DNA from: Octopus bimaculoides
Taxonomy: Eukaryota
DNA: 61,428 nt
NCBI RefSeq assembly: GCF_001194135.2
Contig: NC_068989.1
Location: 37,015,305-37,076,732, forward strand
Reading direction: 5' to 3'
Part shown: positions 1 through 54,734 of the stretch, in pieces
Layout of the letters: every line of letters begins with the position of its first letter
Numbering within the stretch: the stretch's first letter is position 1
The notes under the pieces: generated by a model
What the model was told of the DNA's origin: nothing
The model's database searches: none
Seen by the model: the letters and a program-made list of their open reading frames with translations, nothing else
Translations under genes and position numbers: made by a program

Positions 1-464
1 AGTGGTCACAGCAGGTCCTTATCTCATGGAGAGTACATAGCGTAAAATGTGTGCGGAACCTAGCAACACTATTTTCTGAAGTTCTCCCACGTTAACACTG
101 CAAGGGAGTTTGTTGAGCTGCTTATCAAGGCCCTTTTTAATTAGCCCTAAAACTCCAATCACCACTGGTGCTGTGCTGCTTTTCATTCCCCACATCTTGG
201 TCAATTCTATTTCTAGGTCTTTGTACTTAAATAACTTTTCAACTTCTTTAATGGACACAGTTCTCTCTGATGGTACTGTCACATCTATCGTTATGCATTT
301 CTTATTCTTCCCATCTTTGATGATTATGTCCGGCCTGTTTGCCTTGATTTCATTATCGATGTTGATTGGCATGTCCCAGAGTACTGTTACATCATGTTTT
401 CCGGTCACAGTTTCTGGTTTATGCTGGTACCATCTTTCTGAAGTTGGAAGCTGGTAGTGTTTAC
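1..464 (-). mobile_element. Dong/R4-clade non-LTR retrotransposon, 5'-truncated copy A (REL endonuclease C-terminus)
   Basis: Minus-strand translation WYQHKPE...LWDMPI...ANRPDIIIKD...IDVTVP...EKLFKYKDLEIE...QKIVLLGSAHILRYVLSMR* carries the restriction-like endonuclease motifs (RPD-D-EK-KY) and the LLG(T/S)AHILR terminus typical of R4/Dong. The 5' break abuts (TAA)n. Confidence 0.9.

Positions 465-528
<64 letters not shown>
465..528. repeat. (TTA)n/(TAA)n microsatellite; tail of copy B and 5' flank of copy A
   Basis: Pure trinucleotide tract read directly. Confidence 0.98.
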
Positions 529-529
<1 letters not shown>

Positions 530-720
530 CACACAACAGATTAGAGTGTTGGAAAAGAAAAATTCGTAACATCGGGCTACAACAGGTAACCTTAAATGCC
601 AAGAACCTTCTTAAGTATCCTAGCTGTCCCTAATAACACTGTTTTCAGGAGCTATACTAAACTGGGTTTTATGCCTAATTCCTCTATCCATCTGTAACCG
701 TCTTGAGATGCTATCTCTGC
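529..720 (-). mobile_element. Dong/R4 copy B: ORF C-terminus plus 3' UTR
   Basis: Minus strand reads RWIEELGIKPSLV*LLKTVLLGTARILKKVLGI* (stop at 592-594), then about 60 nt of UTR and a (TAA)n tail. Confidence 0.8.
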
Positions 721-1321
721 TCCAACTACCGTCATCATCTTCCCGCCATTCGCTTTTGGTTTGTTTTCCGCTTGGGCAGTGACATTAGTAGAATGGTCTT
801 CCTGTTCAGGGGTAACTTTTCCGCCAGTCACCGTCTCTTGTTGTATGCTATTTTTGTTTTCGTATCTTAAGTGCCTCAAGCCCATAGATAGAAATTAGCC
901 TTTATTTGTTTTCGAAGTTTTATTTCGAGCATATCTGTTTTTTTTCTATCTAAAATGAGACGTGTTACATTTTATATTTATTGTTATTATTATGTATCTC
1001 TTCTAATTTGTTTAAACGCTGTGTGCTCTACGTTGTCTTGTTTATGTACGAGTTGTACGGGTGCATATGTGGATTATATAACCATCACATTTATGTATTT
1101 TTGTGTAGAGATGAGATTGCATATACGATTATTATTTGTACTTACAGTATTTTTCTGTAGCGACATCGCATTCTCGTGTACTGTTTCAATTTATGAATAG
1201 GCAAGTCGCATCACCGCATATTGTTTATATTATCACACGCTTGTTTTTCTGTGACAACATGCCCGACAGAACCTGTATTTCATATATGAGAGAAATATTT
1301 CGGTATCCTCATCTAATTTAC

Positions 1322-1328
1322 ATTATTA

Positions 1329-1393
<65 letters not shown>
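1322..1393. repeat. (ATT)n microsatellite; tail of copy C
   Basis: Read directly. Confidence 0.98.
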
Positions 1394-2714
1394 GTTCAGT
1401 AGTTTTATTTTTATAACGTGATTTCACTTCACTACCGAGCGCAGCTCTGTGCGCCTTGGGTATGTGCTGTAGTTTGCTGTGGTGCTCTTATGGTTACTGC
1501 ATTGAAAGTGTTTTGCGTAGGATGTGTGCTGTGCCCAGTAGTGCAATTTTCTGTATGTTATATATATTTGTNNNNNNNNNNNNNNNNNNNNNNNNNNNNN
1601 NNNNNNNNNNNNNNNNNNNNNNNNNNNNNNNNNNNNNNNNNNNNNNNNNNNNNNNNNNNNNNNNNNNNNNNNNNNNNNNNNNNNNNNNNNNNNNNNNNNN
1701 NNNNNNNNNNNNNNNNNNNNNNNNNNNNNNNNNNNNNNNNNNNNNNNNNNNNNNNNNNNNNNNNNNNNNNNNNNNNNNNNNNNNNNNNNNNNNNNNNNNN
1801 NNNNNNNNNNNNNNNNNNNNNNNNNNNNNNNNNNNNNNNNNNNNNNNNNNNNNNNNNNNNNNNNNNNNNNNNNNNNNNNNNNNNNNNNNNNNNNNNNNNN
1901 NNNNNNNNNNNNNNNNNNNNNNNNNNNNNNNNNNNNNNNNNNNNNNNNNNNNNNNNNNNNNNNNNNNNNNNNNNNNNNNNNNNNNNNNNNNNNNNNNNNN
2001 NNNNNNNNNNNNNNNNNNNNNNNNNNNNNNNNNNNNNNNNNNNNNNNNNNNNNNNNNNNNNNNNNNNNNNNNNNNNNNNNNNNNNNNNNNNNNNNNNNNN
2101 NNNNNNNNNNNNNNNNNNNNNNNNNNNNNNNNNNNNNNNNNNNNNNNNNNNNNNNNNNNNNNNNNNNNNNNNNNNNNNNNNNNNNNNNNNNNNNNNNNNN
2201 NNNNNNNNNNNNNNNNNNNNNNNNNNNNNNNNNNNNNNNNNNNNNNNNNNNNNNNNNNNNNNNNNNNNNNNNNNNNNNNNNNNNNNNNNNNNNNNNNNNN
2301 NNNNNNNNNNNNNNNNNNNNNNNNNNNNNNNNNNNNNNNNNNNNNNNNNNNNNNNNNNNNNNNNNNNNNNNNNNNNNNNNNNNNNNNNNNNNNNNNNNNN
2401 NNNNNNNNNNNNNNNNNNNNNNNNNNNNNNNNNNNNNNNNNNNNNNNNNNNNNNNNNNNNNNNNNNNNNNNNNNNNNNNNNNNNNNNNNNNNNNNNNNNN
2501 NNNNNNNNNNNNNNNNNNNNNNNNNNNNNNNTTTGCAGTCCTATGGTTGTTATTTTATAATAGTTTTCCAGCTGTATAAGACCCCTGCCACCTTCTGTGC
2601 GTTATATATATAGCCTTTCTATGTCAGATTTTGGGTGGTGCATCCTATATCCTGTCATTATTTTTCTTGTTTTCCTGTCTATTTTAGATAGTTCGTTTAG
2701 TGTCCAGTTAAGGA

Positions 2715-2716
<2 letters not shown>
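1394..2716 (-). mobile_element. Dong/R4 copy C, 5'-truncated within RT, spanning an N-gap
   Basis: Right of the gap: ILNWTLNELSKIDRKTRKIMTGYRMHHPKSDIERLYI*RTEGGRGLIQLE (RT C-terminal LY.PR..GGRGL motif). Left of the gap: NIQKIALLGTAHILRKTLSMQ* (stop 1494-1496), 3' UTR and (TAA)n. The ~1.2 kb spacing fits the expected RT-end to C-terminus distance. Confidence 0.88.
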
Positions 2717-2801
<85 letters not shown>

Positions 2802-2806
2802 TATTA
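2717..2806. repeat. (TTA)n microsatellite between copies C and D
   Basis: Read directly. Confidence 0.98.
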
Positions 2807-2888
2807 TTCAGTAGTCTTATTTTAATCATGTGCATTCATTGCACTACTGAGCGCAGCTCTATGTGCCTTGGGTATGTGCTGTGGTTTG
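2807..2888 (-). mobile_element. Dong/R4 copy D: ~80-bp 3'-UTR-only insertion
   Basis: ttcagtagtcttattttaatc...cactactgagcgcagctctatgtgccttgggtatgtgctgtggtttg is a close copy of the copy C 3' UTR at 1395-1477. TAA tracts lie on both sides. Confidence 0.85.
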
Positions 2889-2923
2889 TTATTGTTATCA
2901 TTATTATTATTACTATTATTATT

Positions 2924-2995
2924 TTTTTTCTTCTTCCTTCAATTTTGTTTCCATTTCTTGTTGTGTGTCTTCTCGACACCTAAGGTAACGAAACT
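2924..2995 (-). mobile_element. Possible further short retroelement 3' end (copy E)
   Basis: Non-repetitive segment ending in an A-run plus (TAA)n on the minus strand, in the same orientation as A-D. There is no second copy in the window, so the assignment rests on position and recollection of octopus repeats. Confidence 0.3.
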
Positions 2996-3254
2996 CACTG
3001 TATACATTATCAAATGACTAAAATAAACACACCAGATTGTTCATTCATAAAATCAAATAAAGTTATGCAAGATAAATATTTGCATGGAAAATCATCGTTC
3101 TCACAGCAACAATGCTCTTCTCAACACGAGTGATGTACCAATTAAAATAAATGTTTCCACTTCTTGCAGTAATAAGCCAGGGATCATTCTCAGTTAATTT
3201 TCAGTTCCTTTCTGATCATTCCTAGTGCCCTTACAATCAATGGTAGTCCAAATA

Positions 3255-3272
3255 TCATCATCATCATCATCA

Positions 3273-3304
<32 letters not shown>

Positions 3305-3476
3305 GTCATCATCATCATCATCGTCACCACCACCAGCATCACCAGCACCACCAGCACCAGCACCANNNNNNNNNNNNNNNNNNNNNNNNNNNNNNNNNNN
3401 NNNNNNNNNNNNNNNNNNNNNNNNNNNNNNNNNNNNNNNNNNNNNNNNNNNNNNNNNNCCACCACCACCACCACTG
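3255..3476. repeat. Compound trinucleotide repeat (CAT/CGT/CAC/CAG) with internal gap
   Basis: Read directly. Confidence 0.95.
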
Positions 3477-3652
3477 ACCTTGAAACCATTGTCTATATTG
3501 TTCTTTTTATTGTTACCGCTTACAGAAAGATTAAATTAGTGCACTGTATTTACTTAGATCCGTTGATGTTCTTATTTTAAATCCCAATGATTTGGTATTG
3601 ATATAGGACCAAAGTCTGGTATTGATAAAATAGGTGTCCCTTAAGAAATTCA

Positions 3653-4026
3653 AGAACTGAAGTTGAGTAAATCATCTGTCACTCAAGTACAGAAGATGAT
3701 TAAATTGCTTTTCAGTGAAGTTCCAGTGTTGAGTTTAATATATTAGTCATTCAGAAACTGGAGTTGGGGTAGTGGTCTACCATTGAAGAACTGATGTTAA
3801 GTAAATCGTTTATTCCCCTTAAAGGCTGGAGCTGAGTAAGTCGTCAACATCACTCACAAACCGGATTTGAATGACTTGTCTATTCTACTCAGAGACTCAA
3901 GTTGAGTAAATTGTCTACTCTATTCAAAGACCGAGTTGACAAATCATTCATTCCACTTACAGACAGGTGTCAAATAAATCGTCTACTCCACTCAGAGACT
4001 TAGTTGAGTTAGTCGTCTCTCCTCAG
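3653..4026. repeat. Degenerate ~35-bp minisatellite (about 9-11 units)
   Basis: Recurring unit approximately agactggagttgagtaaatcgtctactccactcag, with starts near 3788, 3822, 3858, 3891, 3925, 3960 and 3995. Confidence 0.75.
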
Positions 4027-4259
4027 AATCCTCCGGGTACACCCAGAAATTTGAAACCCTGCGTTACACATCAGAAACCAGCATTATTAATGATTTTCAT
4101 TTACTTAAAACTTTTGCTGTTGTAATTGAAGTTGTGTTTGTTGTGGTTCTTGTGACTATGATTGTTTTTTTCTTGACCAAGAACATCTATTATGAAAAGC
4201 TTTCTAGACATGACAGTTTCGTCATTTCGTCATTGCCCAATGTAACTTCTCATTTTTAA
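4027..4259 (+). CDS. Candidate terminal exon encoding a transmembrane-like segment (weak)
   Basis: ctctcctcag| acceptor, then an open frame SSGYTQKFETLRYTSETSIINDFHLLKTFAVVIEVVFVVVLVTMIVFFLTKNIYYEKLSRH...HF*. The acceptor is part of the minisatellite unit and no homologue is recognised. Confidence 0.25.
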
Positions 4260-4289
4260 GCAACGTGGCTACTGTTAATGTAATTTTGT

Positions 4290-4745
4290 GTTGATGTATA
4301 ACGGAATGTCTGTTTCATTTTAGAGGCAGCAAGCAATTTTACATTTGTTCGTTGGAAATACTTTAACAATTATAAATGAAGGTGTCTGCAAGCATCTATT
4401 ATTTCCGTTCTTTTGTTAAAAAAAATTGCAAATGACTGTAATAAGATGTTATACATCTCTGAGAGACAAAATGACGTATCTGTAACCCATCTTTCTTACT
4501 TTCCTGTGTTTCACACATATGAAACCGAAGTCATGAAAATATCACGTGTTTTTGCACATGAATTAGGAAAAAACATTACACGTTCTATAGACGACAGTTG
4601 AATATGAATGTGTGTCGCGTATTCTAACGGTATTTTGGCAACCAATCCTTTCTATGGCTAAGTATTTGAAGTATTTATATGTTTTTGTTTACAATCGGCA
4701 GGCCACTTCCCTTTTTTAATCACTTAAATAAACGATTCGTTAAAA
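4290..4745 (+). repeat. Upstream pseudo-LTR-like copy (diverged direct repeat of ~6770-7235)
   Basis: cacatatgaaaccgaagtcatgaaaatatcacgtgtttttgca (from ~4515) aligns with cacatatgataccgaagacataaaaataacacgtatttttgca (from ~6995). Similarity extends to ~4740/7230. The region begins with an EN C-terminus-like ...NEGVCKH. Confidence 0.6.
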
Positions 4746-4879
4746 TATATACACTCTAATTTTTTCAGTGCACTCTTCTTCTTCTGTTTGTAAACCCGAA
4801 TGTTCACCTATCCTTATATATTGCTCCCTAATCTATCAAATACTGTTCACAGGCGGAATAAAAAGAAGCTGAAAATAGA

Positions 4880-6840
4880 AAAGTAGTTTCTAAAATGTGC
4901 GAAAAATGTCCCGATGCTAACCAAAGAAGAGTGCATTAAAGAACCAAAGATGTAATCAAGATGATGATGAGCCGGAAGTCATTCATCAATAAAGAGAATA
5001 TAGATACTACCAAGACAAACGAGCTAGGTTTCAGATGTTGTATATGAACTTCACAGGATAAAACACTGGAACCCTTTGAGCCTGATCGTCTCGATATGAT
5101 AAAAACAAGTTTTAAAAAATCATTCAACGAAAAATCATTCAAAGTCTTGCCAAAATTCAAAAATGCATTCATTTTTCTTCCGGCAAAGCCAAAAATATGT
5201 ACAAAACTGATATGCGCATATAGCATAGATGCCTTTTCAATAATATCGTCAAAAATTATGAGAAAACCGACCCTAACAATTACCATGCGAATTGTTTAGA
5301 AGCTAAAAAAAGGGCTACCAACTTAAAAATTGACGGTTGAATATACAATTTAGCGTTACATAAACCATAAAGTATATTTAGAAACCGTAAAGATAGTTCT
5401 CTTGTCAACCCAAAATTTAGATGATGAAATCGAGGAAAAAGTGAGACAGTTTGGGGTTGTAAACGTATTTTAGATTTCAGCATATTAAATAGTCTTCCGT
5501 TATGGAATAATTGTAAATCATTTATCAAGTGGTAAATTGACATAGAATACCTTTATAAATCTATAGAGTTCGACAGTCTAGAGTTTTATTTGTCTATAAT
5601 CAAATCACCCTTCAAAAAGCTTTAGAATTCAATAAAGTGACAAAAAGTGAATCGGATATCATTATTATTATTTTGCATTCTTGGGAATCTTTGCTATGTT
5701 AATATGATTATTTTGAGATAAATGTTTTGGTCAACAATTGTTTGATGTACGATGGAAATGAAGTATGCAAACAGCGCTTCATATGTTTACTTCAGAAAAG
5801 GTTCAGTTCTGCAGAGTTCGGTTTCTTCCGTGATGGGAGACCGTTTATTTTAAGAAGTTCCTCAACATATTCAAAACGTTAGATTTAAAGATCACAGTAG
5901 ATGTAGATACGAATCAAAGTAGTCCTAATTCAATAGAAGTAATACTAAATTTAGTTTCCAGAAATTATTATTCTTATAATAAACCTAACTAGAAAATGCA
6001 GTATATAAACAAAAATGACAAGCATACCCATAGAATCAACAAAAAACTTATTCAATAATATAAGCAAGTGTATATCCAGCTTGTCCCTTGACAAAGAATC
6101 TTTTAAACATTATTACAATGACTCATTGTAATAAAAAAAAGACCTTCAGAATATTTTGTATACAGAACAGCACTATTGTTTATAAGTATAAAAATAGGAA
6201 GCGAAATAGTAAATGACATAATCCTCCATATAGCTTAAATGTTTGTTCTAATGTTGTCAGGCTCTTCCTAAGCTTTATAAATAAGCATTACTCAATACAC
6301 CTACGTATCATAAGACATTTAGTATAAGTGGATACACGGTGAACTGTAGTATCGCTACTTCCAGAGCCAGTATCAACAGAGGAAACCTTTCCTGTACTAA
6401 CGCTCAAAACATCCCTTTCTCTTTGTAAATGCAGTGACCTTCGTTGCTGCTCTCTCAAAGGTATGAGTCTTTCTAAAGAATTAGTTTATCAATCTAGTGT
6501 CCTCTTGAAAATAGCAATAATGGAAAAAAAGAAAGCTGTTTAGGGTTTACTGAATAATCCTTTCAAATGAAAAGAGAATCTCACATGCACGCAAATATTC
6601 AGACATTCAGTAAGATTCCACACTACTCTCCTCTCCAAATGTATATGGAATTTAAAAGATGATAGCATTAACAATTATATAATTGATTTGTCCTTTGCAG
6701 AATACGCATCTCTTTATATCAAAGACGCCAGAAAATGTAACAGTTGTCTAGTGGAGAAGAAGGACATTTTATTACAGCCTTTTGCAATTCTAGATAAAAG
6801 ATACAAAACAGGAATTCTTGCAGACACTGCCATTGATTTT
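4880..6840 (+). mobile_element. Decayed full-length Penelope-like element ORF (RT + GIY-YIG endonuclease; Nematis-like clade tentative)
   Basis: Across stops and frameshifts: LEPFEPDRLDMIK; GKAKNMYK; LKIDG..LHKP.IFRN...LVNPK; EFDSLEFY; MYDGNEVC...FGFFRDG (YRDD equivalent); NPPYSLNVCSNV; CKC....CSLKG..L...LVYQS.V; LSKCIWNLK; CNSCLVEK; CRH*. All motifs are in PLE order. Confidence 0.85.
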
Positions 6841-9660: not shown

Positions 9661-9832
9661 AAATACTGATTTCAAATTTTGGCACAAGGCTAGCAAGATC
9701 GTGTTCAATTGGTATTTATTTTATTAATCCTGAAAGGATGAAAGGCAAAGTCGACCTCGGTAGAATTTGAACTCAGAACGTAAACACGAAATGCCGCTAA
9801 GCGTTTTGCCCGGCGTGCTAACAATTTTGCTG
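9661..9832 (-). mobile_element. tRNA-derived SINE, family A (internally deleted)
   Basis: Reverse complement has head ...gttagcacgccgggcaaaacgcttagc..., B-box-like gagttcaaattc and the central gcctttcatcctttc...gat motif shared by at least 10 copies in this window. Confidence 0.85.
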
Positions 9833-9845
9833 TCTTAGAAATAAC

Positions 9846-10065
9846 AATATTCTTTTCTACTCTTGGCACAAGGCTTGAAAGTTTTGGGGAGGAGGCCAGT
9901 CAATTAGATCGACCCCAGTGCGCAATTGGTACTTAATTTATCGACCCTGAAAGGATGAAATGCAAAGTCGACCTCGGCGGAATTTGAACTCAGAACGTAA
10001 AGACAGACGAAATACTGCTAAGAATTTCGCCCGGCGTGCTAACGTTTCTGCCAGCTCACTGCCTT
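9846..10065 (-). mobile_element. tRNA-derived SINE, family A (near full length)
   Basis: Head, B-box gagttcaaattccgcc and central gtcgactttgcatttcatcctttcagggtcgataaattaagtacc domain (resembles the Meta-SINE domain as recalled); tail ccttgtgccaagagtagaaaagaat. Confidence 0.9.
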
Positions 10066-10174
10066 TAGAAGTAACAATATTGGCGGTGCGAGAACAAAGT
10101 ATCACTACATGATATATTGGAAGGAAGAGCTACAGTTCTTACAATATAAAAGAGAAATGTCACATGTGTGGCAT

Positions 10175-10365
10175 GTTTCCTGAGGCAATATACTGTATAG
10201 TATCACTAGAGCTAACTAGAGAACTTCTATGTGATCGCTTGAACAGCCAGAAATGACAGCTAAATCTCTTTCAAACCATGATCTACCTTTTTAGAAAGGA
10301 ACAAAACATTGAATAATATAGTACCAAAACAATTTTTTTCAGAAGAAAGACGAGTAGGCCGTGGC
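10175..10365 (+). repeat. Dispersed repeat family D (unclassified)
   Basis: The core gaaatgacagctaaatctctttcaaa recurs in reverse at ~21990-22040 and ~51935-51975. Confidence 0.55.
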
Positions 10366-10467
10366 CAGAATGAAATGCCTCTAAGCATTTTGTCCGACGC
10401 GTCAACGATTGTGTTGGCTCGCCGCCTTAAGTAATAATAACAGCAGCAGCAGCAGCAACAACAACGA

Positions 10468-10833: not shown

Positions 10834-11047
10834 TAGGGCGGCAAGCTAGCAGATTTTGCAAGCCGGGCAAAATACTTGGTGGCATTTCGTCCATCTTTAC
10901 GTTGGCAAGTTCAAATTCCACCGAGATCGACTTTGCCTTTTATCCTTTCGGGGTCGATAAAATAAGTATCATTTGAATACTGAGGTCAATGTAATCGACT
11001 TATCCCCTTCTCCAAACTTGCAGGCCTTGTGCCAAAATATGAAATCC
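10834..11047 (+). mobile_element. tRNA-derived SINE, family A
   Basis: ggcggcaagctagcaga...aagttcaaattccaccgagatcgactttgccttttatcctttcggggtcgataaaataag...ccttgtgccaaaatatgaaa. Confidence 0.9.
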
Positions 11048-24487: not shown

Positions 24488-25314
24488 GCTTTTCTGCATT
24501 TTATTTCAAATATACATTTCTCTTATGGATCGTTTTAACCCATCATGTGCGTACATGCAAGATTTTCCCTGGATCTACAGTAGCGTTATAACGTGTTGCA
24601 GTTTAACGATCTGTGATTAATTGAGCTCTTAATTATCGTGGACATATATGTTTTGATGCTTTATGCATTATTGCTTTTATGTATATATATATAAATATAA
24701 ATATATGCACATATATAAGTTCATATGCATATTTATATACACATACATATATATATGCATAAACACATACATACACATACACACACATATATACATATAC
24801 ATATATATATATATATATATANNNNNNNNNNNNNNNNNNNNNNNNNNNNNNNNNNNNNNNNNNNNNNNNNNNNNNNNNNNNNNNNNNNNNNNNNNNNNNN
24901 NNNNNNNNNNNNNNNNNNNNNNNNNNNNNNNNNNNNNNNNNNNNNNNNNNNNNNNNNNNNNNNNNNNNNNNNNNNNNNNNNNNNNNNNNNNNNNNNNNNN
25001 NNNNNNNNNNNNNNNNNNNNNNNNNNNNNNNNNNNNNNNNNNNNNNNNNNNNNNNNNNNNNNNNNNNNNNNNNNNNNNNNNNNGATATGTAGATTTATAG
25101 AGCAGCTCATTAAAAACATCACAAAACAATTTGCTAATCTCGTTATTTGTTTCAACTTCGTATTTGTATCTGGTTTGTAAGGTTCTTCATGCGAATTCGT
25201 ATGTTGAAACGACTTTTCTTAGACACAATAAAATTTTCTTTTAACTAATATAGGTAAAATAAATTTTAAGAGGTATCCACTTAGTTCTTTAAAGAAACCC
25301 TTTCTCCTCCTAGA

Positions 25315-25935
25315 CAGGATCTTGCAGATAAATTGAAACGATTTTTACAATGCATAAACTGGTTATAAATACTAAAATAATGGTAGTTATACTTATTACA
25401 ACAAAAACATATATCACTCAATATGGCCACCCTTTTGGGAAATTACTGCCTCCACAAGAGAACGAAATCTTTTGCAGCTGCCGCATCCTCTGTCTGTTTG
25501 ATTTTGCGTGTCGCACGCACGATGCAGATCTTCAAACTGTTGACACTCGAGTGCGGTGAAGCATTAGTTCTTGCTTGAAGTACACCCCATGAAAAGTAAT
25601 ATAGAAAGTTGAGATCTGAGCTATTACTGGGCCAGATGTTAGCCCTCACAAAAAATTGTCTCACCAAGGAAGGCCTGTGTTGCTTTTGACCCATGACATG
25701 GTGCAGAATCCTGGATAAACACCACATTGTCAAACTTCTGCTCCATCCAAGGTGACAGAGTGTTCTTCAGGATGTTTAGATACTCCTTTGTGTCGATATT
25801 CAAGCCAGACTCAATGGAATGTGGATCTATAACATTTCCATCACTCGTCACGGCTCCAACTACCATTACAGAGACATAATTCTTAGTCTCAAACACAGTG
25901 GATTTTGGTAAAAATGAAGCGCAGGTGGTCATGCA
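25315..25935 (-). mobile_element. Tc1/mariner DD37D (maT-like) 3' fragment with probable right TIR
   Basis: VMVVGAVTSDG...YLNILK...FIQDSAPCH...WPSNSSDLNFLYYFSWG...VEAVISQKGGHIE*. TIR-like cagg...taaattgaaacgatttt at 25315. Confidence 0.85.
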
Positions 25936-25937
25936 GA

Positions 25938-26130
25938 TCCCTTTTTTGCAAGGCGAAGGAGCAGCGGAAATCCATGACGAGATGAAAGAAGTCTTAAAGG
26001 ATGGCTGCCCATCTTACTCCACAATGAAAATCAAGGCGTCAAGGTTTCGGAACCCAGGCCAGGACGGCTAACTTCTGAGGACAAAGCCGACGTTGAGCAC
26101 GCTATGATTATCGAGGACCGCCGGATTTCA
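25938..26130 (+). mobile_element. mariner (DD34D-type) N-terminal HTH fragment
   Basis: FLQGEGAAEIHDEMKEVLKDGCPSYSTMK...RF and GRLTSEDKADVEHAMIIEDRRIS. Confidence 0.75.
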
Positions 26131-26688
26131 GCTATTTAAAAAAAAAACATTTCATTTAATTTTTCCACCATTTAATTGTTTTTCTTGCTTTATTCTAAGT
26201 TGAAAAAGTCGAAAAGACTGAAACCGGGTACTAAAATGTTTTTCATGATAAAATTATTTTAGCATTTTCTACCTTGTCTTATTTTCCTTATACATATCAA
26301 CTCGTGTGTTACTTTTCAATCTTCTACTCACACATATAAATATGTATATTTATATATTATATATACATATATATATAAATAAATGTATATATATATATAT
26401 ACATATACACATATGTTCATATATATATATATATNNNNNNNNNNNNNNNNNNNNNNNNNNNNNNNNNNNNNNNNNNNNNNNNNNNNNNNNNNNNNNNNNN
26501 NNNNNNNNNNNNNNNNNNNNNNNNNNNNNNNNNNNNNNNNNNNNNNNNNNNNNNNNNNNNNNNNNNNNNNNNNNNNNNNNNNNNNNNNNNNNNNNNNNNN
26601 NNNNNNNNNNNNNNNNNNNNNNNNNNNNNNNNNNNNNNNNNNNNNNNNNNNNNNNNNNNNNNNNNNNNNNNNNNNNNNNNNNNNNNNN

Positions 26689-26731
<43 letters not shown>

Positions 26732-26743
26732 TAAAAACGCACT

Positions 26744-26784
<41 letters not shown>

Positions 26785-27476
26785 GCACATACATACGTAT
26801 ATTCCTGATCAAACCTTCGCTACACATAATTGTTCATAGAGAAACCAATACCAACCCTGATCTTCCTTAAAATGCCCTGAAACGCCTTTCGCGAACCATT
26901 CTTCTGCATCTAATTTCTCGACGCCAAACAGTCTACGTAGCGTGTAATCCTGTCAAATGTTTTCTCAACAGTGTCAAATATAGTTGTTTGATCTCATCTA
27001 AGAAATTCTCCTGTAATATTCTCTGTAGAAATATGACGTGTGGTTACACATTCTGACACATACTCAAACTGCATCTCATTTAGGAACTTTTTGCTATGTA
27101 ACTTACCCGAACCGATGTTATTATGTACTAAGTTCACACGAGAAATATTGAGTATGTTTTGAATTATTCAGAAATACAAATATATTTGAGTATACGAACA
27201 TAGGTTTGTGTATATGTGTGTTTGTATAAGTGGGGTGGTGCGTGCACACATGCATACACATACACTGGAACACATGCACACACGCACACATGTTTCGTAA
27301 TGTAAAAGTAGTAAAATATATTGAAAAATTTTCACATAATGCAAGCATTGTCGAGCATAGAATTCAACGCATTGGGTAGAGTAGACAGGCTTCTTTGAGT
27401 TACACACGGTGCTTGACTGTTAACGACTATCCTGAACAGCCGATCTCTGGGCGAAGCTCAGAGTACTCTGTTAAGT

Positions 27477-27528
<52 letters not shown>

Positions 27529-28178
27529 AACAATTTTAAATTTGGGTATACTCCTTGTAGTTAGCCATNNNNNNNNNNNNNNNNNNNNNNNNNNNNNNNN
27601 NNNNNNNNNNNNNNNNNNNNNNNNNNNNNNNNNNNNNNNNNNNNNNNNNNNNNNNNNNNNNNNNNNNNNNNNNNNNNNNNNNNNNNNNNNNNNNNNNNNN
27701 NNNNNNNNNNNNNNNNNNNNNNNNNNNNNNNNNNNNNNNNNNNNNNNNNNNNNNNNNNNNNNNNNNNNNNNNNNNNNNNNNNNNNNNNNNNNNNNNNNNN
27801 NNNNNNNNNNNNNNNNNNNNNNNNNNNNNNNNNNNNNNNNNNNNNNNNNNNNNNNNNNNNNNNNNNNNNNNNNNNNNNNNNNNNNNNNNNNNNNNNNNNN
27901 NNNNNNNNNNNNNNNNNNNNNNNNNNNNNNNNNNNNNNNNNNNNNNNNNNNNNNNNNNNNNNNNNNNNNNNNNNNNNNNNNNNNNNNNNNNNNNNNNNNN
28001 NNNNNNNNNNNNNNNNNNNNNNNNNNNNNNNNNNNNNNNNNNNNNNNNNNNNNNNNNNNNNNNNNNNNNNNNNNNNNNNNNNNNNNNNNNNNNNNNNNNN
28101 NNNNNNNNNNNNNNNNNNNNNNNNNNNNNNNNNNNNNNNNNNNNNNNNNNNNNNNNNNNNNNNNNNNNNNNNNNNNNN

Positions 28179-28228
<50 letters not shown>

Positions 28229-28946
28229 CACACACACACACACAACATACACGGAAAAACGGACGTATATTTATATCTAAATGTTTTTATGGTGGAGAAC
28301 TGTAAACACTTGCAAAAGCAAGTTGGATGTTACAACCTGAAGGAGAGAAAAATATGCACTTCAATGTTTCTGCTAATAATCTAGCAGTATTCTGTGGCAT
28401 CTACAGAACTGGATGTAAAAGCACTTTTAGTCTGCAATCCAATGAAGCAACAGAGAATCTCTGATGAAAATTCTTCATTAATTTTAAAAGTAACAACAAT
28501 CATTATTTTAAAAATGTTTCCGCTACCAAGCCTTAGGGACTAAACGTAAAATACCAGACGCGTGTACTTTAGAACATATTCTACATTTGTCTAAAAATAA
28601 GACACATGTATTAGAAAGTGTTTGATTAAAAATTCAAGATAAATTATTATTTTTTTTAGTTCTGATTAAAAAGATGTGAAAAAAAATGGGACAGTTTCAA
28701 AATGTGTATCAAGGGTTGATACGCGTCGCATATCAATACATGATGCACACACTACAAGACAAAGGTAGCAGCGTTTAACGGCATTTGTTCAAAGATTTCC
28801 AAAGGAAGGGGTCCAAAGATTTTCAAAGGAAGGGGTCCTAACCCCGAAATATCAAAATTCCAGGTAAAGCTGTCAACCTGAATTATTTTTATAACTTTCA
28901 TTGTTTGGCTTTTAAAAAAGTATATATTATCAAAGACCTTTATATA

Positions 28947-29594
28947 CAGGGCGCGATGCGTAAATTATCGCCGTTTTATATTTTTAATTTCGCGCATGCG
29001 CATTGTTTGTTTTTGATTTTGTCGACTACACAGTACAATATAGTCAGCTGGGCACTGTGTGTTAGAAAAACAGCACCATGACGCGATTCACTCTGCCAGA
29101 AATTTGAAAACGACATGCTGAAATGCTTGGCATTCGCGCCAGAAGCTCCAATACGAACATTTCAGAGTGTTTGGGTGTCTGACTGAGGACATGTACCGAC
29201 AGTGATAAAAATCAAGAATCCAGTTAACATATTGGCGTTTGGAGTGATCACTAGTGATGGCGACGTTATGCCTCCATTCATCTTTCCACACGGCCTCACA
29301 CTCAACACGGAGGCCTATATGAATTGTCTGGAGGAGGTAGTGCTGGCTTGAGTCAAGAGGATAGCTGCTAGAAGACCCTATGTTTGACAACAAGACTCTG
29401 TACCATGCTACACAAGAAGGGGAACCCAGTCGTGGCTGTCAGACAATTTCTGCGACCACATCACCCTTAACATTTGGCTACCTTACACCCCAAACTGCAA
29501 CCCCATTGATTATTATGTGCGAGGAGCAGTTGAGCGAGAGACAATAAAAACTCCTTGTAACACCAAAGATGAACTGAAGGCAAGGATTATGGAG
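28947..29594 (+). mobile_element. Tc1/mariner maT-like element, internally deleted and 3'-truncated
   Basis: TA|cagggcgcgatgcgtaaattatcgccgtttt left TIR. ATG ~29078 and a short N-terminus are joined to NPVNILAFGVITSDGDVMPPFIF...QQDSVPCY...W...PNCNPIDYYV.GAVE. Confidence 0.88.
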
Positions 29595-30039
29595 AGAAAA
29601 GTATGTCACTTAGACGGAAAAACGCACTACATAAAAACAGATCCGTTTCTCAAGGTAGAGGCAGGTACTTTTGAGTGAACACATAGAGAGATGTGCAGGG
29701 AATCGCCAACCAAGCATCACAGTTTTCCTTTTCTACTAGAGCAAAGAAACAATTTCTGTACAAGAACGTTTAAATAAAGAAAATTTATTTATCGAAAAAT
29801 ACAGAACACGCCTAAATATGAACGTATAACCAACTTTGGTCCCAGTATATATTTTAATATATTTTAATTCATGAGCATATATCTATCACTGTACATATTT
29901 CATCTCACTATTTTAGCTTATGAGTTTTTGTATGTTTATTTATCCCGCCTCCAAAACGAGCAATTACTTCCCTTGTCCCGAGTAATAATTATCACCAGTT
30001 ACCTATATATATATATATGTATGTGTATATATATACTCT

Positions 30040-41727: not shown

Positions 41728-41895
41728 ACAGGGATTAGCATTGAGTTGCTTCTCCAACATACTGAAAATTTAGAAATAGCAGTCAAAGAACTGCTGATTC
41801 TAAACTACAAATTTTTCTCTAAATGGATGGCGATATTTGACTGCTATTTCTAAATTTTCAGTATGTTGGAGAAGCAACTCAATGCTAATCCCTGT
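41728..41895. mobile_element. Perfect 60-bp inverted repeat (MITE-like hairpin, TA-flanked)
   Basis: 41728-41787 is the exact reverse complement of 41836-41895, with a 48-nt loop. Ends read TA|CAGGG...CCCTG|T(N). Confidence 0.7.
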
Positions 41896-42612
41896 NNNNN
41901 NNNNNNNNNNNNNNNNNNNNNNNNNNNNNNNNNNNNNNNNNNNNNNNNNNNNNNNNNNNNNNNNNNNNNNNNNNNNNNNNNNNNNNNNNNNNNNNNNNNN
42001 NNNNNNNNNNNNNNNNNNNNNNNNNNNNNNNNNNNNNNNNNNNNNNNNNNNNNNNNNNNNNNNNNNNNNNNNNNTATATATATATATATATAAATATATA
42101 TTTATATATTATATGTATGTATACACACACACACACACACACACACTCACATATATATATATACATACGTACATATATTCAGATGCAAAAAAAGGCGAAA
42201 AAGAAATATGGAATCTGAAGTCTTATTCAGAGATTATCTGACATATTTACAACAGCAGATAAAGTTTTTTTTGCAGTGAAATGGGATTGCATTACTTATA
42301 GAACTTGTTTTTATGAGAGAGATATATTTGTAAAACATATCTATGATTACCGTTCCGTGAAGGCGAACAAACAATGGAAATGTTATCAATATTATTCATG
42401 AATGATACAGATCTGAGTCCTCGGACTCCATGCATATTCTGAGTTAAGCAGTGTCTGCTAACCTTTCGTGTAGACTCTACATTCTACACATTTCCAAAGC
42501 AGATGTTAAATACCAGAATGTTTAATGCAGGGAGCATAAAAAAAGTTAACTAGAAATCAACACATGTAATGAATAAAAAATGATATTAGACAAAGGCAAA
42601 TATTATTTTCAT

Positions 42613-48882: not shown

Positions 48883-49910
48883 GACATATACATGTATGCT
48901 TTTGGTATATATATCTATGCGGGTGTGTGAGATGTATGCTAGTGCAGTTGCAACAGCGTTGGTGCTGGGTGTTGGGCGGAATAAGTGTTGGAGTGAGGTT
49001 TTGTGGCATGGGGGATGTAAGAGAGAAGACATAGGTGTGTGTAAGTATCTGTGTCTGTGTGTATGTGTGTATACGTGTATAGTTGGGCATGTACATAGAT
49101 GTGTATGTGTGTGTGTTTGTGTGCGCACACCACGATTACGGTGGCAAATGTAGGTATTACAGGGTATGCATAAGGTTGTGGGGTTGGTCTGCAATCTGAG
49201 TAGGCATTCGTAGTCAGGAATCCTGTTCTTGGTCGTGGGGCAGTTAGTGTTGACGAGCAGCCAATGTTAAGGTGGTATATCTCGGTTGTCGGTTGCCAAT
49301 GGTTCTTATTGCTGCCATCAGAGGCACGCCCTTCTGGTGGACTTCAAACCACTGGCTGCCGATATGCAGCGACAGAAGGAAAATACAATCGTGTATGTGA
49401 GCAAGGTATCATGAGAGCAGAAGCAAAACGAACACACAAACACAAAATCTGGTTAAGATCAACGGACAAAACAGACTTGAAAATAGTGGGAAGGCACAAG
49501 AAAAATGCATAGAAACTAAGAGACTTATACTCAAAGACTTTCCAATCATGTTCCCTCTATCATTTTAGAAATAAGTCGGCAGCTATTTTATCCATTGTAA
49601 CCTCTCTTTGTGTTATTCGTTAAAGTGTGTTTGTAGGGTTATTTGGTTTCTGTTTCTGGCTTGCCAAATGACCATGTAAAGGTCTCCTTATTGGTTCATT
49701 GTTCGCTTTGTGAATGAATCTTGTATTTGTTCACATAAGCAACTTCGTTCTATGATCCCTGCCTGTTTCTCTTGCTCATAGTCTTTAGGGTAAATCAATT
49801 CTGTTCGTAGGTCGTTTAACAGTGAAATACATCGGGATTGTCTCTCATTAGTAATTCGACTATCTTATGGAAATGTTCATACATTTCGTTATAAAGATTT
49901 ATCATCATCC

Positions 49911-50027
<117 letters not shown>

Positions 50028-50870
50028 GGCGGCTACCAGGTAGAATCGCTAGCACGCTGGACATAATATTAGTGGCATTTCGTCCGTCTTTATGCACTGA
50101 GTTCAAATTCCGCCGACGTCGACTTTGCTTTTCATTTTTTGGGCTCGATAGAATAACTACCTGTTGAGCACTGGGGTCGATGTAAACGACTAACTTCCTC
50201 CTCCAGAATTTCAGGCTTTATGCCTACAATAGAAAGAGTTATTATTATTACGCGGTGACCAGGCAGGATTAACACGCCGCACAAAATGCTTAAAGACATT
50301 TCGTCTGTCTTTATGCCTGAGTTCAAATGCCACCGAGGTTTAACTCTGTCTTTCATTCCTTCCGGGTCGACAAAATAAGTACCACTTGAGCGCCGAGGGC
50401 GATGTACACTAGTTCCTCCCACAAAAATTTCGGTGGAAAGATAAAAAAAGATTATTATTGTTGTTGTTGTTAAAGTGGCGAGCTGTTAGAATGTTTAGCA
50501 CACCAGACAAAATGCTTAGCGATATTTCTCCAGGCTCTTTACGCTCTGATTTCAAATCATGCCAAGTATTTCGGATTCGATGGAATAAAGTATCAGTTAG
50601 GTACTAGGGTTGATAAAACTCTCTCCTCAAAATTGTTAATCTTGTGTCAAAATCTGAAATTAAAAGCGGCGCGCTGGAAGAATCGTTAGCACATCGGACA
50701 AAATGCTTAATGGCATTTTTTCCGGTTGTATACATTTTGAGTTCAAATACCGTTGAGGTAGTTTGCATTTCATCCTTTCGGAGCTGATAAAATAAATACC
50801 AGCAGAGCACTGGTACCAATGTTTTCTACTTACACATTCCTTCAAAATTGTTGACAACTTTCTTAGTTTA
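50028..50870 (+). mobile_element. Four head-to-tail SINE family A copies
   Basis: Heads at ~50028, 50250, 50473 and 50664, each with cg.tagcac...aaaatgctta...ga(g/t)ttcaaat...tcgataaaataag. Confidence 0.85.
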
Positions 50871-52844: not shown

Positions 52845-52886
<42 letters not shown>

Positions 52887-52890
52887 CATT

Positions 52891-54015
52891 AATTTCATTT
52901 CACTTCTCAGAACTCTTGATTTCACTTGCTCTGGCAAATTCTGTAAGCGCGGTCCTGTTGCCAAGTATCTTATAGGGTCTCTTCCAACGATACTTAACGT
53001 TTAAGTACCAATCTTAAAATCCTGCTGTCCCAAATAGAACAGTTTTCTGAGAATATTCTACCCTCATGTCAATCTCAATTTCTTCAACTAATTTCAAAAA
53101 TTGGCAGTTAACGGTCCCAGGGATTCAACAACTACTAGGATGACAGTTACCTTCTTCATTGCCCACATTCGCGCAATCTCACCTTTTAGTGGCTTGTACT
53201 TTTCAATCTTTTCTAGTTCTTTGTTATTCACTTATACATCCCCAAGTATGGCAATGTCTATGATCTTGGTTTCCGTCATCATTTTGTCAACTACAACAGA
53301 GTCTGGTCTCCGAGTATCAATTACAGATTGTAAAATTTCACAAATATACTCATTATTCTCGGTGCCATTATTCTGGTTTATGCGCATACCATTTCAATGT
53401 CCTTTCAAGGCCGTACTTCTAACATAATCTCCAATGGACATACCTAGCTACGTTATCATGCTTCCTTTTGTATCCTTTTTGAACCAGTTTGCTACACTCA
53501 GTCACAATATATTTTGTTTTTGCTGTCACACATCCTACAAAGGGGCGATTCATTGCTCTTATCTATTTGGAACTTGGACTAATTAGTTTTCAGAACTTGA
53601 TCCTCGGCGCTGGATATCAACGTCTCAGTGCATCAGCTGTTGGTCATGTCTTCCTCTTTCATTTCTCTGAAGCATTGCCCATGTATCGCTTTCATTTTCC
53701 AGTTGTTCAACCTCTTGTTTCTTAAATGTTGTTGCGGGTGTCACATCTTTATTAGGTATCGTGTTGCTGTTTCTCACAAGCAACAATCAAAGGTTCAATC
53801 TGTTGGCAATTCAGATCTTGTAGCTTAAGCCTATGAGACCTCTTCCTCTCTTGTTTCTAGGCACATACAACCTTTTGATATCGCTTTTTTTGGGTGCAGT
53901 TCCTTGTTAATTGTCACTACTTACTAGGTTTTTCTATCAATTTCCTCAAGTATGTTCTTTGTCCATCTAAGAACACCTGCGCCATATCGCATTAAGGAGA
54001 CAGCTCACATATCCA
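52891..54015 (-). mobile_element. Dong/R4 copy F, 5'-truncated, with (TAA)n tail at 52846-52890
   Basis: AVSLMRYGAG...EIDRKT...RLYVPRNKRGRGLI...PLCRMC...KRKHDNVARYVHW..C..YGL...RRPD...IIDIAI...EKIEKYKPLK.EI..MW...QKTVLFGTA (RT end, CCHC knuckle, REL). Confidence 0.9.
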
Positions 54016-54734
54016 TTGACCTGATCTCGTATGTATTCATCATCATCATCATCATCATCTGATGTGTATTTATATGCCATATAGAGGCCGCTCTATTATT
54101 AATATTTCAATATCAGTCTTCAGTTAACTTTATTAATGTTTTTCCCACTCTGTGTGCGTGTGTTTGTCTGTTATTCTTCCATGTGTATGTAGACGTGTTT
54201 AGATCATAATTTCCGTTCTATTTCAATGTTATTTTTTCTCAATCATGCTTTCTCTTTTTTCTCTCTTCTTCTCTTTCTGTCTCCTCTGAATGTATTTCTC
54301 CTTATCTGCGATAGTTTCATGTTTCACTCTTTCCCTCTCAAAGTTAATGTACTTTTCTTTATGTGTATCATTTTAATCTTTTCCCCACTCTCTCTAAATG
54401 TGCATGCTCTCAACGTGTGCACGCATGTGTATACCTGTTTTCAGCGCCAAAATATTCGTCGCCAAATTGCCAACGTCCAAACGGTTGCTCCCAATTGTCC
54501 ATTCCAGTATGTAAGTGTACATTGCTAGGTTACTGAAGAAATTCTTCTGATTTTTTTCACTTCATGAAGCGGTTTACGGCAGCGGCATAATCTACAACAA
54601 CAACGAACATTAAAAAGGAATGTTTCAGTATCATTCTACCTCTGATTTCAATGGCAAATAATGATCAGAAGTTATTAACTCTTACAACATAATGCCTTAC
54701 AAATATATAACTATCAGGAAACATAAAAATTTTC

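What the first reader, a model, noticed from the sequence alone, without database searches (positions are those of the whole stretch)
1..2995. Head-to-tail stack of different Dong/R4 retrotransposons, each delimited by (TAA)n: a self-renewing microsatellite landing pad
Seen: four clear (and one possible) REL-type non-LTR fragments lie in the same orientation, and every junction between them is a TAA tract. Their C-termini differ (GSAHILRYVLSMR, GTARILKKVLGI, GTAHILRKTLSMQ), so at least three lineages used one site. Established: Dong elements of the R4 clade insert specifically into TAA repeats. Inference: each insertion leaves a new (TAA)n tail that becomes the next target, building tandem arrays and seeding TAA microsatellites in this genome.
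Basis: partly seen in the sequence, partly recalled or inferred. Interest (0 to 1): 0.75.

Follow-up and report, generated by a model that had tools for sequence, protein, structure and literature searches.

The report
Stacked TAA-targeting Dong-like retrotransposon fragments
The left end of the window is a pile of broken copies of several related jumping genes, all pointing the same way and separated by TAA repeats, which is the ordinary footprint of a known class of elements (Dong-like LINEs) that insert into TAA repeats and leave a new TAA tail.

Summary
The core observation holds. On the minus strand, window 1-3253 consists of 5'-truncated fragments of restriction-like-endonuclease (RLE) non-LTR retrotransposons, all in one orientation, separated by four sense-strand (TAA)n tracts.

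- C and D, on either side of the 960-N gap, are compatible with a single element.
- Only 529-692 is the high-copy element B. 693-1321 (E) is a separate low-copy repeat, joined to B without any TAA.
- The stack continues beyond 2995 with a further probable fragment, H (2924-3253).

At least four lineages are present, with about 30 to about 80,000 copies each.

Fragment A has a PD-(D/E)XK fold closest to the R2 endonuclease. Full-length relatives are RT-CCHC-RLE proteins with no APE domain.

TAA association is general:
- The dominant family's 3' end is followed by (TAA)n genome-wide in two organisms.
- A Mb-contig assembly of another animal shows stacks of up to seven copies, each separated by TAA.
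- Full-length copies there start exactly at TAA.

This matches published Dong behaviour, including in a snail, and Dong-R4 is already known to be abundant in octopus. R4-clade membership by phylogeny and read-level continuity of this locus could not be tested. Verdict: real but ordinary, a new member of a known kind.

The parts
1..464 (-). Fragment A. A 5'-truncated Dong-like copy: 149 open codons of the RLE domain (PD..D..K motif intact), with the stop codon at about 22-24. Its 3' UTR runs off the left end of the window.
   Evidence: About 30-75 copies, estimated from contig depth.
465..528 (-). A(TAA)21, 100% pure. This is the tail of B and the 5' flank of A.
529..692 (-). Fragment B. The 3' end of a second lineage: about 32 codons (RWIEELGIKPSLV*LLKTVLLGTARILKKVLGI*, with an internal stop) plus a 67-nt 3' UTR. 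Its family consensus continues upstream of 695 as ..GALGTIPKDL, so B is 5'-truncated here.
   Evidence: About 2,500-5,000 copies.
693..1321 (-). Segment E. A low-copy repeat (about 7-30 copies) that is also present in two related organisms at 80-90% identity. Its 5' end abuts the TAA tract. It is joined to B without TAA. Other copies continue after 693 into codons IPVIVGALG, nearly identical to the start of the H family. E is probably an internal piece of an H-type element whose 3' end was lost when B inserted.
   Evidence: The junction is confirmed by a 100%-identical contig covering 659-857 at single-copy depth in an independent sample.
1322..1393 (-). (AAT)24, 98.6% pure, with one TGA variant at the end next to E. 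This is the tail of C.
1394..1571 (-). Fragment C. The last 25 codons (..IALLGTAHILRKTLSMQ*) plus a 3' UTR of about 105 nt, from the dominant family. It runs into the gap.
   Evidence: About 80,000 copies of the 3' UTR. The family's 3' end is followed by TAA genome-wide.
1572..2531 (.). Assembly gap of 960 N. It probably hides about 918 nt of the same element that joins D to C. It is the only gap in the window that lies inside a high-copy LINE rather than next to a simple repeat.
   Evidence: (family consensus continues in ORF on both edges).
2532..2716 (-). Fragment D. The RT-thumb region (..HPKSDIERLYI*RTEGGRGLIQLE..) of the dominant family. It is 5'-truncated exactly at the TAA tract and differs from the family consensus by about 1%.
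   Evidence: About 25,000-30,000 copies.
2717..2808 (-). (TAA)31, 97.8% pure, with two TGA variants next to F. This is the tail of F and the 5' flank of D.
2809..2888 (-). Fragment F. An 80-bp 3'-UTR-only copy of the C family, 85% identical to C.
2889..2923 (-). Imperfect (TAA)12, 91% pure. This is the 5' flank of F and the probable tail of H.
2924..3253 (-). Fragment H (probable). A degenerate Dong-like 3' end reading GLPLIVRALGMIRKELKIN*, then a frameshift, then LRMIPGLLLQEVETFILIGTSLVLRRALLL*, plus a 3' UTR of about 190 nt.
   Evidence: high-copy family, consensus VIVGALGMI; weak but colinear profile hits.
3254..3365 (-). A (GAT)n(GAC)n(GGT/GCT)n microsatellite that forms the 5' flank of H and runs into a second gap.
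52847..54034 (-). Separate solitary copy G. A degenerate 5'-truncated Dong-like element of about 1.15 kb (52886-54034) with a pure (TAA)13 tail (52847-52885). Its 5' end lies next to (GAT)8, not TAA.

Best explanation
Window 1-3253 is a head-to-tail pile of five or six 5'-truncated copies of RLE-type, Dong-like non-LTR retrotransposons from at least four lineages. The copies are H, F, D..C, E, B and A. They entered one (TAA)n microsatellite one after another.

**Proposed mechanism (inferred from family knowledge, not shown here).**
1. The element's protein nicks the TTA strand of a TAA tract.
2. The freed 3'-OH primes reverse transcription of the element RNA from its (UAA)n end (target-primed reverse transcription).
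3. Copying usually stops early, which gives 5'-truncated copies.
4. The 5' end is joined within the upstream part of the tract.

Each insertion therefore leaves TAA on both sides, including a fresh pure tail, so the site stays a target or becomes a better one. Because TAA/TTA is strand-asymmetric, every insertion has the same orientation.

The young D..C element most likely split the tract between F and E. B most likely primed on the tail of E, and its 5' joining deleted the 3' end of E, which explains the one junction without TAA.
For: **Shown directly in the window**
- Fragments, orientation and zero-distance junctions. Chance is about 1e-12 to 1e-13.
- Different lineages and copy numbers.

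**RLE identity**
- Relatives have RVT_1 plus zf-RVT/CCHC plus the C-terminal A domain, with no APE and no N-terminal C2H2 motif.
- The best sequence matches in the PDB are R2 proteins, E about 5e-28.
- The fold of A matches the R2 RLE best (9dou_A, E 6.9e-4, prob 1.0), then other PD-(D/E)XK nucleases.

**TAA association beyond this locus**
- The C-family 3' end is followed by (TAA)n in 60 contigs of the window's organism and 74 contigs of a related organism.
- The full-length contig L001 ends in (TAA)19.
- A copy in Exaiptasia has a TAA tail.
- 18 of 21 3' ends have a sense TAA tract, against 1 with an antisense tract.
- Full-length 5' ends in L003 and L004 start exactly after TAA.
- A 5'-truncated copy in L003 (9791-10750) has a 106-bp TAA tract upstream that is not the tail of any same-strand element.

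**Stacks elsewhere**
- Mb-scale contigs of another animal hold stacks of three to seven copies with different truncation points and TAA at each junction; L004 has seven in a row.

**Tract purity fits relative age**
- The tails of B and G are 100% pure, and the outermost tract is 91% pure.
- The single variant in the C tail sits at the end far from C.

**Literature**
- Dong targets TAA in Bombyx, Anopheles and Biomphalaria (PMC3812793).
- The 5' junction of Dong is (TAA)n (PMC3774820).
- Dong-R4 is the dominant recently active RLE LINE in octopus (PMC13282606).
Against: - The E|B junction (692/693) has no TAA.
- The 5' ends of G and H abut (GAT)n, not TAA.
- E has no detectable similarity to Dong proteins, so its place in the model rests on a 19-nt match between two family consensus ends.
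- H is supported only by weak colinear profile hits plus reading by eye.
- The TAA tracts of this short-read scaffold could not be crossed by any read or contig available here. The 960-N gap hides about a third of the region.
- Placement in the R4/Dong clade was not tested by phylogeny.
- No HDV-like ribozyme was detected in the relatives' 5' UTRs.
- The loci from the other genome were chosen because they contain a relative, so the frequency of arrays there is biased upward.
Confidence: 0.8

Rival explanations
1. The elements merely carry a (TAA)n tail, as some LINEs without target specificity do, and have no sequence-specific endonuclease. Under this view, stacks arise because the (UAA)n end of the RNA anneals to any nicked TTA-rich DNA, so earlier tails are favoured passively.
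For: - The 5' ends of G and H, and the E|B junction, lack TAA.
- The nicking specificity of the protein was not tested.
Against: - Full-length copies begin exactly at TAA in two independent loci.
- A TAA tract lies upstream of a copy that has no same-strand neighbour.
- Seven elements in a row each sit in TAA.
- Published Dong is classed as target-specific (PMC3812793, PMC4640811).
- In practice this rival gives the same genomic outcome and differs only in which step provides the specificity.
Confidence: 0.12
2. The stack is an assembly artefact. Unrelated contigs that end in TAA repeats were mis-joined in a short-read scaffold.
For: - The assembly is gap-rich, with 12 gaps in 61 kb, 11 of them next to simple repeats.
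- Three tracts are 64-92 bp of almost pure repeat, which k-mer contigs cannot cross.
- No long reads were available.
Against: - The non-TAA junction E|B, and the flanks at 1023-1305 and 2932-3279, are reproduced at single-copy depth in independent samples.
- The same architecture is seen in Mb-scale contigs of another genome.
- The orientation is uniform for all six pieces.
- Random mis-joins would not place the 5'-truncated ends of A, E, D and F exactly at tract ends.
Confidence: 0.07
3. The families belong to another RLE clade, for example HERO, some of whose families are microsatellite-specific, rather than to R4/Dong proper.
For: - No reference R4, Dong or HERO sequences were available, so clade placement is untested.
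- HERO includes microsatellite-specific families (PMC4640811).
- No HDV-like ribozyme hit was found.
Against: - TAA is the published target of Dong specifically (PMC3812793).
- RepeatMasker-based surveys of octopus find Dong-R4 to be the abundant, active RLE class (1,129 recent insertions) and Hero to be rare (13) (PMC13282606).
- Full-length relatives measure about 4.1 kb, close to the roughly 4.2 kb per Dong-R4 insertion implied by that table.
Confidence: 0.15
4. The array arose by tandem duplication or unequal crossing-over between TAA tracts, not by successive insertions.
For: Microsatellites can mediate unequal exchange. C and F belong to one family.
Against: - The units differ in lineage, length and truncation point, and show no DNA similarity apart from C and F.
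- C and F are only 85% identical, while D differs from its family consensus by about 1%.
Confidence: 0.02

Closest known systems
Dong (Bombyx mori, GenBank L08889), with DongAg (Anopheles) and DongBg (Biomphalaria glabrata)
   Same: - It is an RLE-type non-LTR element found inside (TAA)n, with sense TAA at the 5' junction and at the tail (PMC3812793, PMC3774820).
- A mollusc member is already known.
- Here the same TAA flanks are seen on both sides, and the same RT-CCHC-RLE layout is seen in relatives.
   Different: - Sequence relationship to Dong itself was not measured, because no reference was available.
- The copy number of one family here is very high, about 8e4.
- An HDV-like 5' ribozyme, shown for Dong, was not detected in relatives by Rfam.
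Dong-R4 families annotated in Octopus vulgaris and O. bimaculoides repeat surveys
   Same: - It is the abundant, recently active RLE LINE class in octopus genomes (PMC13282606 Table 1; PMC8967140).
- The implied element length of about 4.2 kb matches the roughly 4.1-kb full-length relative L001.
   Different: - Neither of the two surveys read mentions TAA, and a four-term search of the held library found no octopus paper on it.
R2 (28S rDNA-specific RLE element; solved structures 8gh6, 9dou, 9nl2)
   Same: It is the best PDB match, both by sequence over RT and thumb (E about 5e-28) and by fold for the endonuclease domain of fragment A. It uses the same target-primed reverse transcription logic.
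   Different: Relatives of the window's elements lack N-terminal C2H2 and Myb motifs, and the target is a microsatellite rather than rDNA.
TRAS/SART telomeric-repeat-specific LINEs of Bombyx (from memory)
   Same: They are site-specific LINEs that accumulate as same-orientation arrays within a simple repeat, which persists between copies.
   Different: They are APE-type elements with poly(A) tails, so the target repeat is not regenerated by the element's own tail.
Microsatellite birth from retroposon tails (Alu and L1 poly(A); review PMC3812793)
   Same: TE 3' tails are the source of many A-rich microsatellites. In this window, 6 of 7 long TAA tracts sit directly after a Dong-like or SINE-like 3' end.
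   Different: Here the tail repeat is also the element's insertion target, which creates positive feedback.

Membership tests
RLE-type non-LTR retrotransposons (R2/R4/NeSL/CRE/HERO group) | A single protein with RT followed by a CCHC motif and a C-terminal PD-(D/E)XK endonuclease, and no APE domain. | tested here: met
   - Full-length relatives have RVT_1 plus zf-RVT, with fragment A aligning to the extreme C-terminus and no Exo_endo_phos domain.
- A CCHC motif lies about 84 aa before the RPD motif in 17 of 17 relatives.
- The fold of A is closest to the R2 RLE.
- The window itself holds only C-terminal and thumb parts.
Dong / R4 clade | Insertion into (TAA)n, with sense-strand TAA at the 5' junction and the 3' end. 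| tested here: met
   - In the window, the 3' ends of B, C, F and G and the 5' ends of A, E, D and F abut TAA directly.
- The C family shows the same 3' flank genome-wide.
- Relatives.
- Exceptions: the E|B junction and the 5' ends of G and H.
Dong / R4 clade | The RT domain groups with R4 and Dong in a phylogeny. | not testable with these tools
   No R4, Dong, Rex6 or HERO reference protein could be obtained. The supplements of the relevant papers hold none, and PMC309301 is not held.
Dong / R4 clade | An HDV-like self-cleaving ribozyme at the 5' end (PMC3774820). | tested here: inconclusive
   Rfam scans of six related loci, and of a full-length 5' UTR, found no ribozyme. Rfam's HDV-type models are narrow, and the window holds no 5' end.
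Dong / R4 clade | No N-terminal zinc-finger or Myb DNA-binding motifs (definition recalled from memory). | tested here: met
   Pfam finds none in 8 full-length relatives. A regex finds no N-terminal C2H2 pattern in 16 of 17; the exception, P0207, has one C2H2-like match at residue 421.
R2 clade | N-terminal C2H2 and Myb motifs, and insertion at a fixed 28S rDNA site. | tested here: not met
   The motifs are absent, and the flanks are TAA repeats, not rDNA. No rRNA was found in the window.
HERO clade | RT phylogeny; mostly non-specific insertion, with a few microsatellite-specific families (PMC4640811). | not testable with these tools
   No reference sequences were available. The strict TAA association and the published rarity of Hero in octopus (PMC13282606) argue against it but do not exclude it.
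APE-type LINEs with TAA-like tails (e.g. I-factor type; from memory) | An N-terminal apurinic-like endonuclease (Exo_endo_phos). | tested here: not met
   No Exo_endo_phos domain in any of 8 full-length relatives.

The most novel reading that the evidence does not exclude
One TAA-tail, TAA-target system may be shared by a Dong-like family of about 80,000 copies and by the genome's hyper-abundant SINE, whose core has about 350,000 copies. In this window the SINE also forms a head-to-tail stack, and two of the four stacked units end in TAA. If so, a single RLE LINE clade would be the main generator of TAA microsatellites in this genome, and of the TGA microsatellites derived from them. It would also be the driver of the SINE expansion, with microsatellites acting as self-extending safe harbours.
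Probability: 0.25. Interest if true: 0.55.

Novelty: new member of a known kind. Interest (0 to 1): 0.3.

Why it matters
- **For annotation.** The region is entirely repeat-derived, and the 960-N gap most likely hides the middle of a very abundant young LINE. It should not be mined for genes.
- **For genome biology.** This is a clean local example of how a microsatellite-specific LINE regenerates its own target. That process produces same-orientation arrays and many TAA microsatellites.
- **For cephalopod genomes.** With about 8e4 copies of one family, the process could account for a sizeable share of TAA repeats, and for assembly breaks, in this genome.
- **Limits.** The principle is already established for Dong, and Dong-R4 abundance in octopus is published. 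The value lies in documenting TAA targeting and stacking in this lineage and in pointing to a possible SINE partner, not in a new mechanism.

Tried and rejected
- **Pfam on the fragments alone.** No significant family. Sequence search of A against the PDB gave only a marginal R2 hit, E 0.71. This was resolved later through full-length relatives and a fold search.
- **Long reads.** Searches for PacBio and Nanopore runs returned nothing. Logan contigs cannot cross the pure TAA tracts, so the continuity of the stack and the gap could not be tested at read level.
- **Orthologous empty site.** Contigs from related organisms, laid on 690-1345 and on 2800-3255, showed that these 'flanks' are themselves repeats (E and H families). 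No orthologous empty site could be identified.
- **Genome-wide 5'-junction census from loose ends of family D.** Only the continuation of the family consensus was reported, so this was not informative.
- **Clade placement.** No named R4, Dong or HERO references were found in cluster names or paper supplements.
- **Identifying the organism.** A second protein search with fragment D found no hit above 78% identity and no species name.
- **Ribozyme search with Rfam.** Negative. The window also has no Rfam or tRNA hit.
- **E as Dong coding sequence.** Profile and relaxed tblastn searches did no better than control regions. I rejected my first reading of 693-1321 as single-copy DNA once related-species contigs showed 10-30 copies.
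Full report
**What is in the sequence**

All the elements lie on the minus strand, so the TAA tracts read TTA on the + strand. Reading the minus strand 5' to 3', that is from high to low window coordinates, the order is as follows.

| Coordinates | Feature |
|---|---|
| 3365-3254 | (GAT/GAC)n microsatellite |
| 3253-2924 | H, a degenerate Dong-like 3' end |
| 2923-2889 | imperfect (TAA)12 |
| 2888-2809 | F, 80 bp of 3' UTR |
| 2808-2717 | (TAA)31 |
| 2716-2532 | D, RT-thumb codons |
| 2531-1572 | gap of 960 N |
| 1571-1394 | C, last 25 codons plus 3' UTR |
| 1393-1322 | (AAT)24 |
| 1321-693 | E, a low-copy repeat |
| 692-529 | B, last ~32 codons plus 3' UTR |
| 528-465 | A(TAA)21 |
| 464-1 | A, 149 open codons and a stop; its 3' UTR leaves the window |

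Element ends touch the tracts with no intervening bases. A simple calculation on this window gives about 2e-13 for the four 3' ends and about 3e-12 for four of six 5' ends arising by chance. A further solitary copy, G (52886-54034), has a pure (TAA)13 tail.

**The gap, tested first**

- D aligns to residues 693-752 and C to residues 1059-1081 of the same full-length relative, P0273. The missing 306 codons (918 nt) compare with 967 nt between the aligned codons in the assembly.
- Both sides belong to the same very abundant family. At both gap edges the family consensus, seen as loose contig ends, continues in the open reading frame.
- C and D are therefore compatible with one 5'-truncated element of about 1.3 kb.
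- With the nominal 960 N the two frames are off by one base. This carries no information, because the length is an estimate.
- I could not prove continuity. No long-read run was available, and short contigs stop inside the repeat.
- The other 11 gaps of the window abut simple repeats. This one alone lies inside a high-copy LINE.

**What the fragments are**

- Pfam sees nothing in the fragments alone.
- Fragment A has thousands of homologues. In every full-length one (1,000-1,300 aa) it aligns to the extreme C-terminus.
- Those proteins carry RVT_1 in the middle, then a zf-RVT/CCHC motif (CRxC-x7-H-x4-C) about 84 residues before an RPD motif. They have no APE domain. A C2H2-like pattern upstream of the RT occurs in only one of 17.
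- Their best solved relatives are R2 retrotransposon proteins (E about 5e-28). The R2 endonuclease motif PD..D..K lines up with NRPDIII..IDV..EKLFKYK of A.
- An AlphaFold model of A (pLDDT 73, pTM 0.70) finds three R2 proteins as its top PDB matches (9dou_A, E 6.9e-4). These are followed by cap-snatching endonucleases, restriction enzymes and resolvases, that is, the PD-(D/E)XK fold.
- The 'REL-type' reading is therefore supported.

**How many lineages**

A, B and C share no DNA similarity. F is 85% identical to C. Copy numbers are estimated from summed Logan contig depth divided by the depth of about 42 seen for 100%-identical single-copy contigs.

| Piece | Approximate copies |
|---|---|
| A | 30-75 |
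| B | 2,500-5,000 |
| H | ~500 |
| E | 7-30 |
| D | 25,000-30,000 |
| C/F 3' UTR | ~80,000 |

D differs from its family consensus at about 1% of sites, so it is young. At least four lineages used this site: A, B, C/D/F and H (E probably belongs with H).

**The one junction without TAA**

- High-copy B ends at 692-695, where its family consensus continues as ..GALGTIPKDL.
- E is a different family that is also present in two related organisms at 80-90% identity. After position 693 its other copies continue as ATACCAGTGATTGTCGGAGCACTT, which encodes IPVIVGALG.
- That sequence is nearly identical to the start of the H-family consensus, GTGATTGTAGGAGCACTTGGAATG.
- E has no profile similarity to Dong proteins.
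- The E|B junction is real: a 199-nt contig from an independent sample covers 659-857 without a mismatch at single-copy depth.
- My reading is that E is an internal piece of an H-type element. B primed on E's former TAA tail, and its 5' joining deleted E's 3' end. This is inference.

**Is TAA association a property of the family?**

- Genome-wide, the best-supported continuation of contigs that reach the 3' end of the C family is (TTA)n on the + strand. This is seen in 60 contigs of the window's organism and 74 of a related one.
- A full-length relative on a 4.1-kb contig ends in (TAA)19, about 250 nt after the stop codon.
- An Exaiptasia copy has a TAA tract 86 bp after its last codon.
- Four 20-kb loci from Mb-scale contigs of another animal assembly (ENA ERZ25066847; A-like copies about 71% identical in DNA) contain same-orientation stacks. 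In each, every Dong-like piece is separated from the next by a sense TAA tract. L004 has seven in a row, including a full-length copy.
- Across these loci and the window, 18 of 21 copies with a complete C-terminus have a sense TAA tract within 500 bp downstream, against 1 with an antisense tract. 15 of 27 have one within 120 bp upstream.
- Two independent full-length copies both begin (TAA)n|T(T/A)GTCCTGGGTATGAC.
- One 5'-truncated copy has a 106-bp TAA tract upstream that is not the tail of any same-strand element.
- These last two points argue for true insertion into TAA, not merely possession of a TAA tail.
- These loci were chosen because they contain a relative, so array frequency is biased. 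Their existence in long contigs nevertheless shows that such stacks are not an assembly artefact in general.

**Comparison with what is known**

- TAA microsatellites are the published target of Dong in Bombyx, Anopheles and the snail Biomphalaria (PMC3812793, citing Kojima and Fujiwara 2004 and Xiong and Eickbush 1993).
- The 5' junction of Dong is (TAA)n, and Dong carries an HDV-like ribozyme there (PMC3774820).
- RLE elements fall into the CRE, R2, R4, NeSL and HERO clades, and some HERO families are microsatellite-specific (PMC4640811).
- Dong-R4 is the dominant recently active RLE class in Octopus vulgaris, with 5 families and 1,129 recent insertions, against 13 for Hero and 1 for R2 (PMC13282606). 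It is among the abundant LINE classes shared by coleoid cephalopods, including octopuses (PMC8967140).
- Neither of these two surveys mentions TAA, and a four-term search of the held library found no octopus paper on it.
- I could not verify the organism, because labels are coded. I could not obtain R4, Dong or HERO reference proteins, so clade membership rests on architecture, target and the literature, not on a tree.
- Rfam found no ribozyme in relatives' 5' regions, which is inconclusive.

**Mechanism and rivals**

- The best explanation is successive target-primed insertions into one TAA tract, each leaving TAA on both sides and a fresh tail. Orientation is fixed by the strand asymmetry of the target.
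- Tract purity fits this model. The tails of B and G are 100% pure and the outermost tract is 91% pure. The single variant in C's tail lies at the end far from C, where old target would remain.
- The rivals are passive annealing without endonuclease specificity, scaffold mis-joins, another RLE clade, and tandem duplication. They are weighed in their own sections. None is favoured, but the first two cannot be excluded without reads across the tracts and biochemistry.

**Verdict**

This is a real and well-structured example of a known behaviour. The finding is a new member of a known kind, of modest interest. The one lead that reaches beyond the known is the SINE stack with TAA tails noted in passing.

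Noticed in passing
window 50028-50830 (minus strand); also 9700-10430 and 10858-11044: Four SINE-like units of about 150-210 bp lie head to tail. Two of them end in (TAA)4 and (TAA)20, and one ends in (CAA)n(TAA)3. The conserved core (50100-50127) has a contig depth of about 14.8 million against about 42 for single-copy sequence, or roughly 350,000 copies. A related organism shows a similar figure. This may be a SINE partner of the TAA-targeting LINEs. Other copies, at 9700-10430, have non-TAA tails.
   Followed up: partly
window 3254-3341, 54037-54059, 49900-49967: (GAT)n, equivalent to (TGA)n on the element strand, borders three insertions: the 5' end of H, the 5' end of G, and the far side of the SINE's (TAA)20 tail, where it runs to about 24 units. 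TGA variants also occur inside the TAA tails. Either TGA tracts derive from TAA tails by A-to-G change and expansion, or some lineages also use TGA repeats as targets.
   Followed up: no
window, all 12 runs of N: Eleven of the 12 assembly gaps abut a simple repeat, such as (TA)n, (CA)n, (AG)n or (CCA)n, on at least one side. Only the gap at 1572-2531 lies inside a high-copy LINE. Gaps in this assembly mark microsatellites and young repeats.
   Followed up: yes
window 693-1321 and related-organism contigs: Repeat family E (about 10-30 copies, 80-90% alike across three organisms) extends beyond both ends of the window copy. It is joined in other copies to an H-like Dong 3' end. It could be a decayed or non-autonomous Dong derivative. 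Its sequence has no detectable coding similarity.
   Followed up: partly
L003-L006 (ENA ERZ25066847, Mb-scale contigs): An unidentified animal genome shows very dense Dong-like arrays, with up to seven copies and TAA tracts of up to 372 bp within 10 kb. Full-length copies there have a conserved 5' end, GTCCTGGGTATGAC, directly after the TAA tract. This would be a good place to look for a 5' ribozyme.
   Followed up: partly
window 41728-41757 and 41866-41895: A short inverted duplicate, whose two arms give the same peptide in tblastn, lies directly next to the gap at 41896-42074.
   Followed up: no
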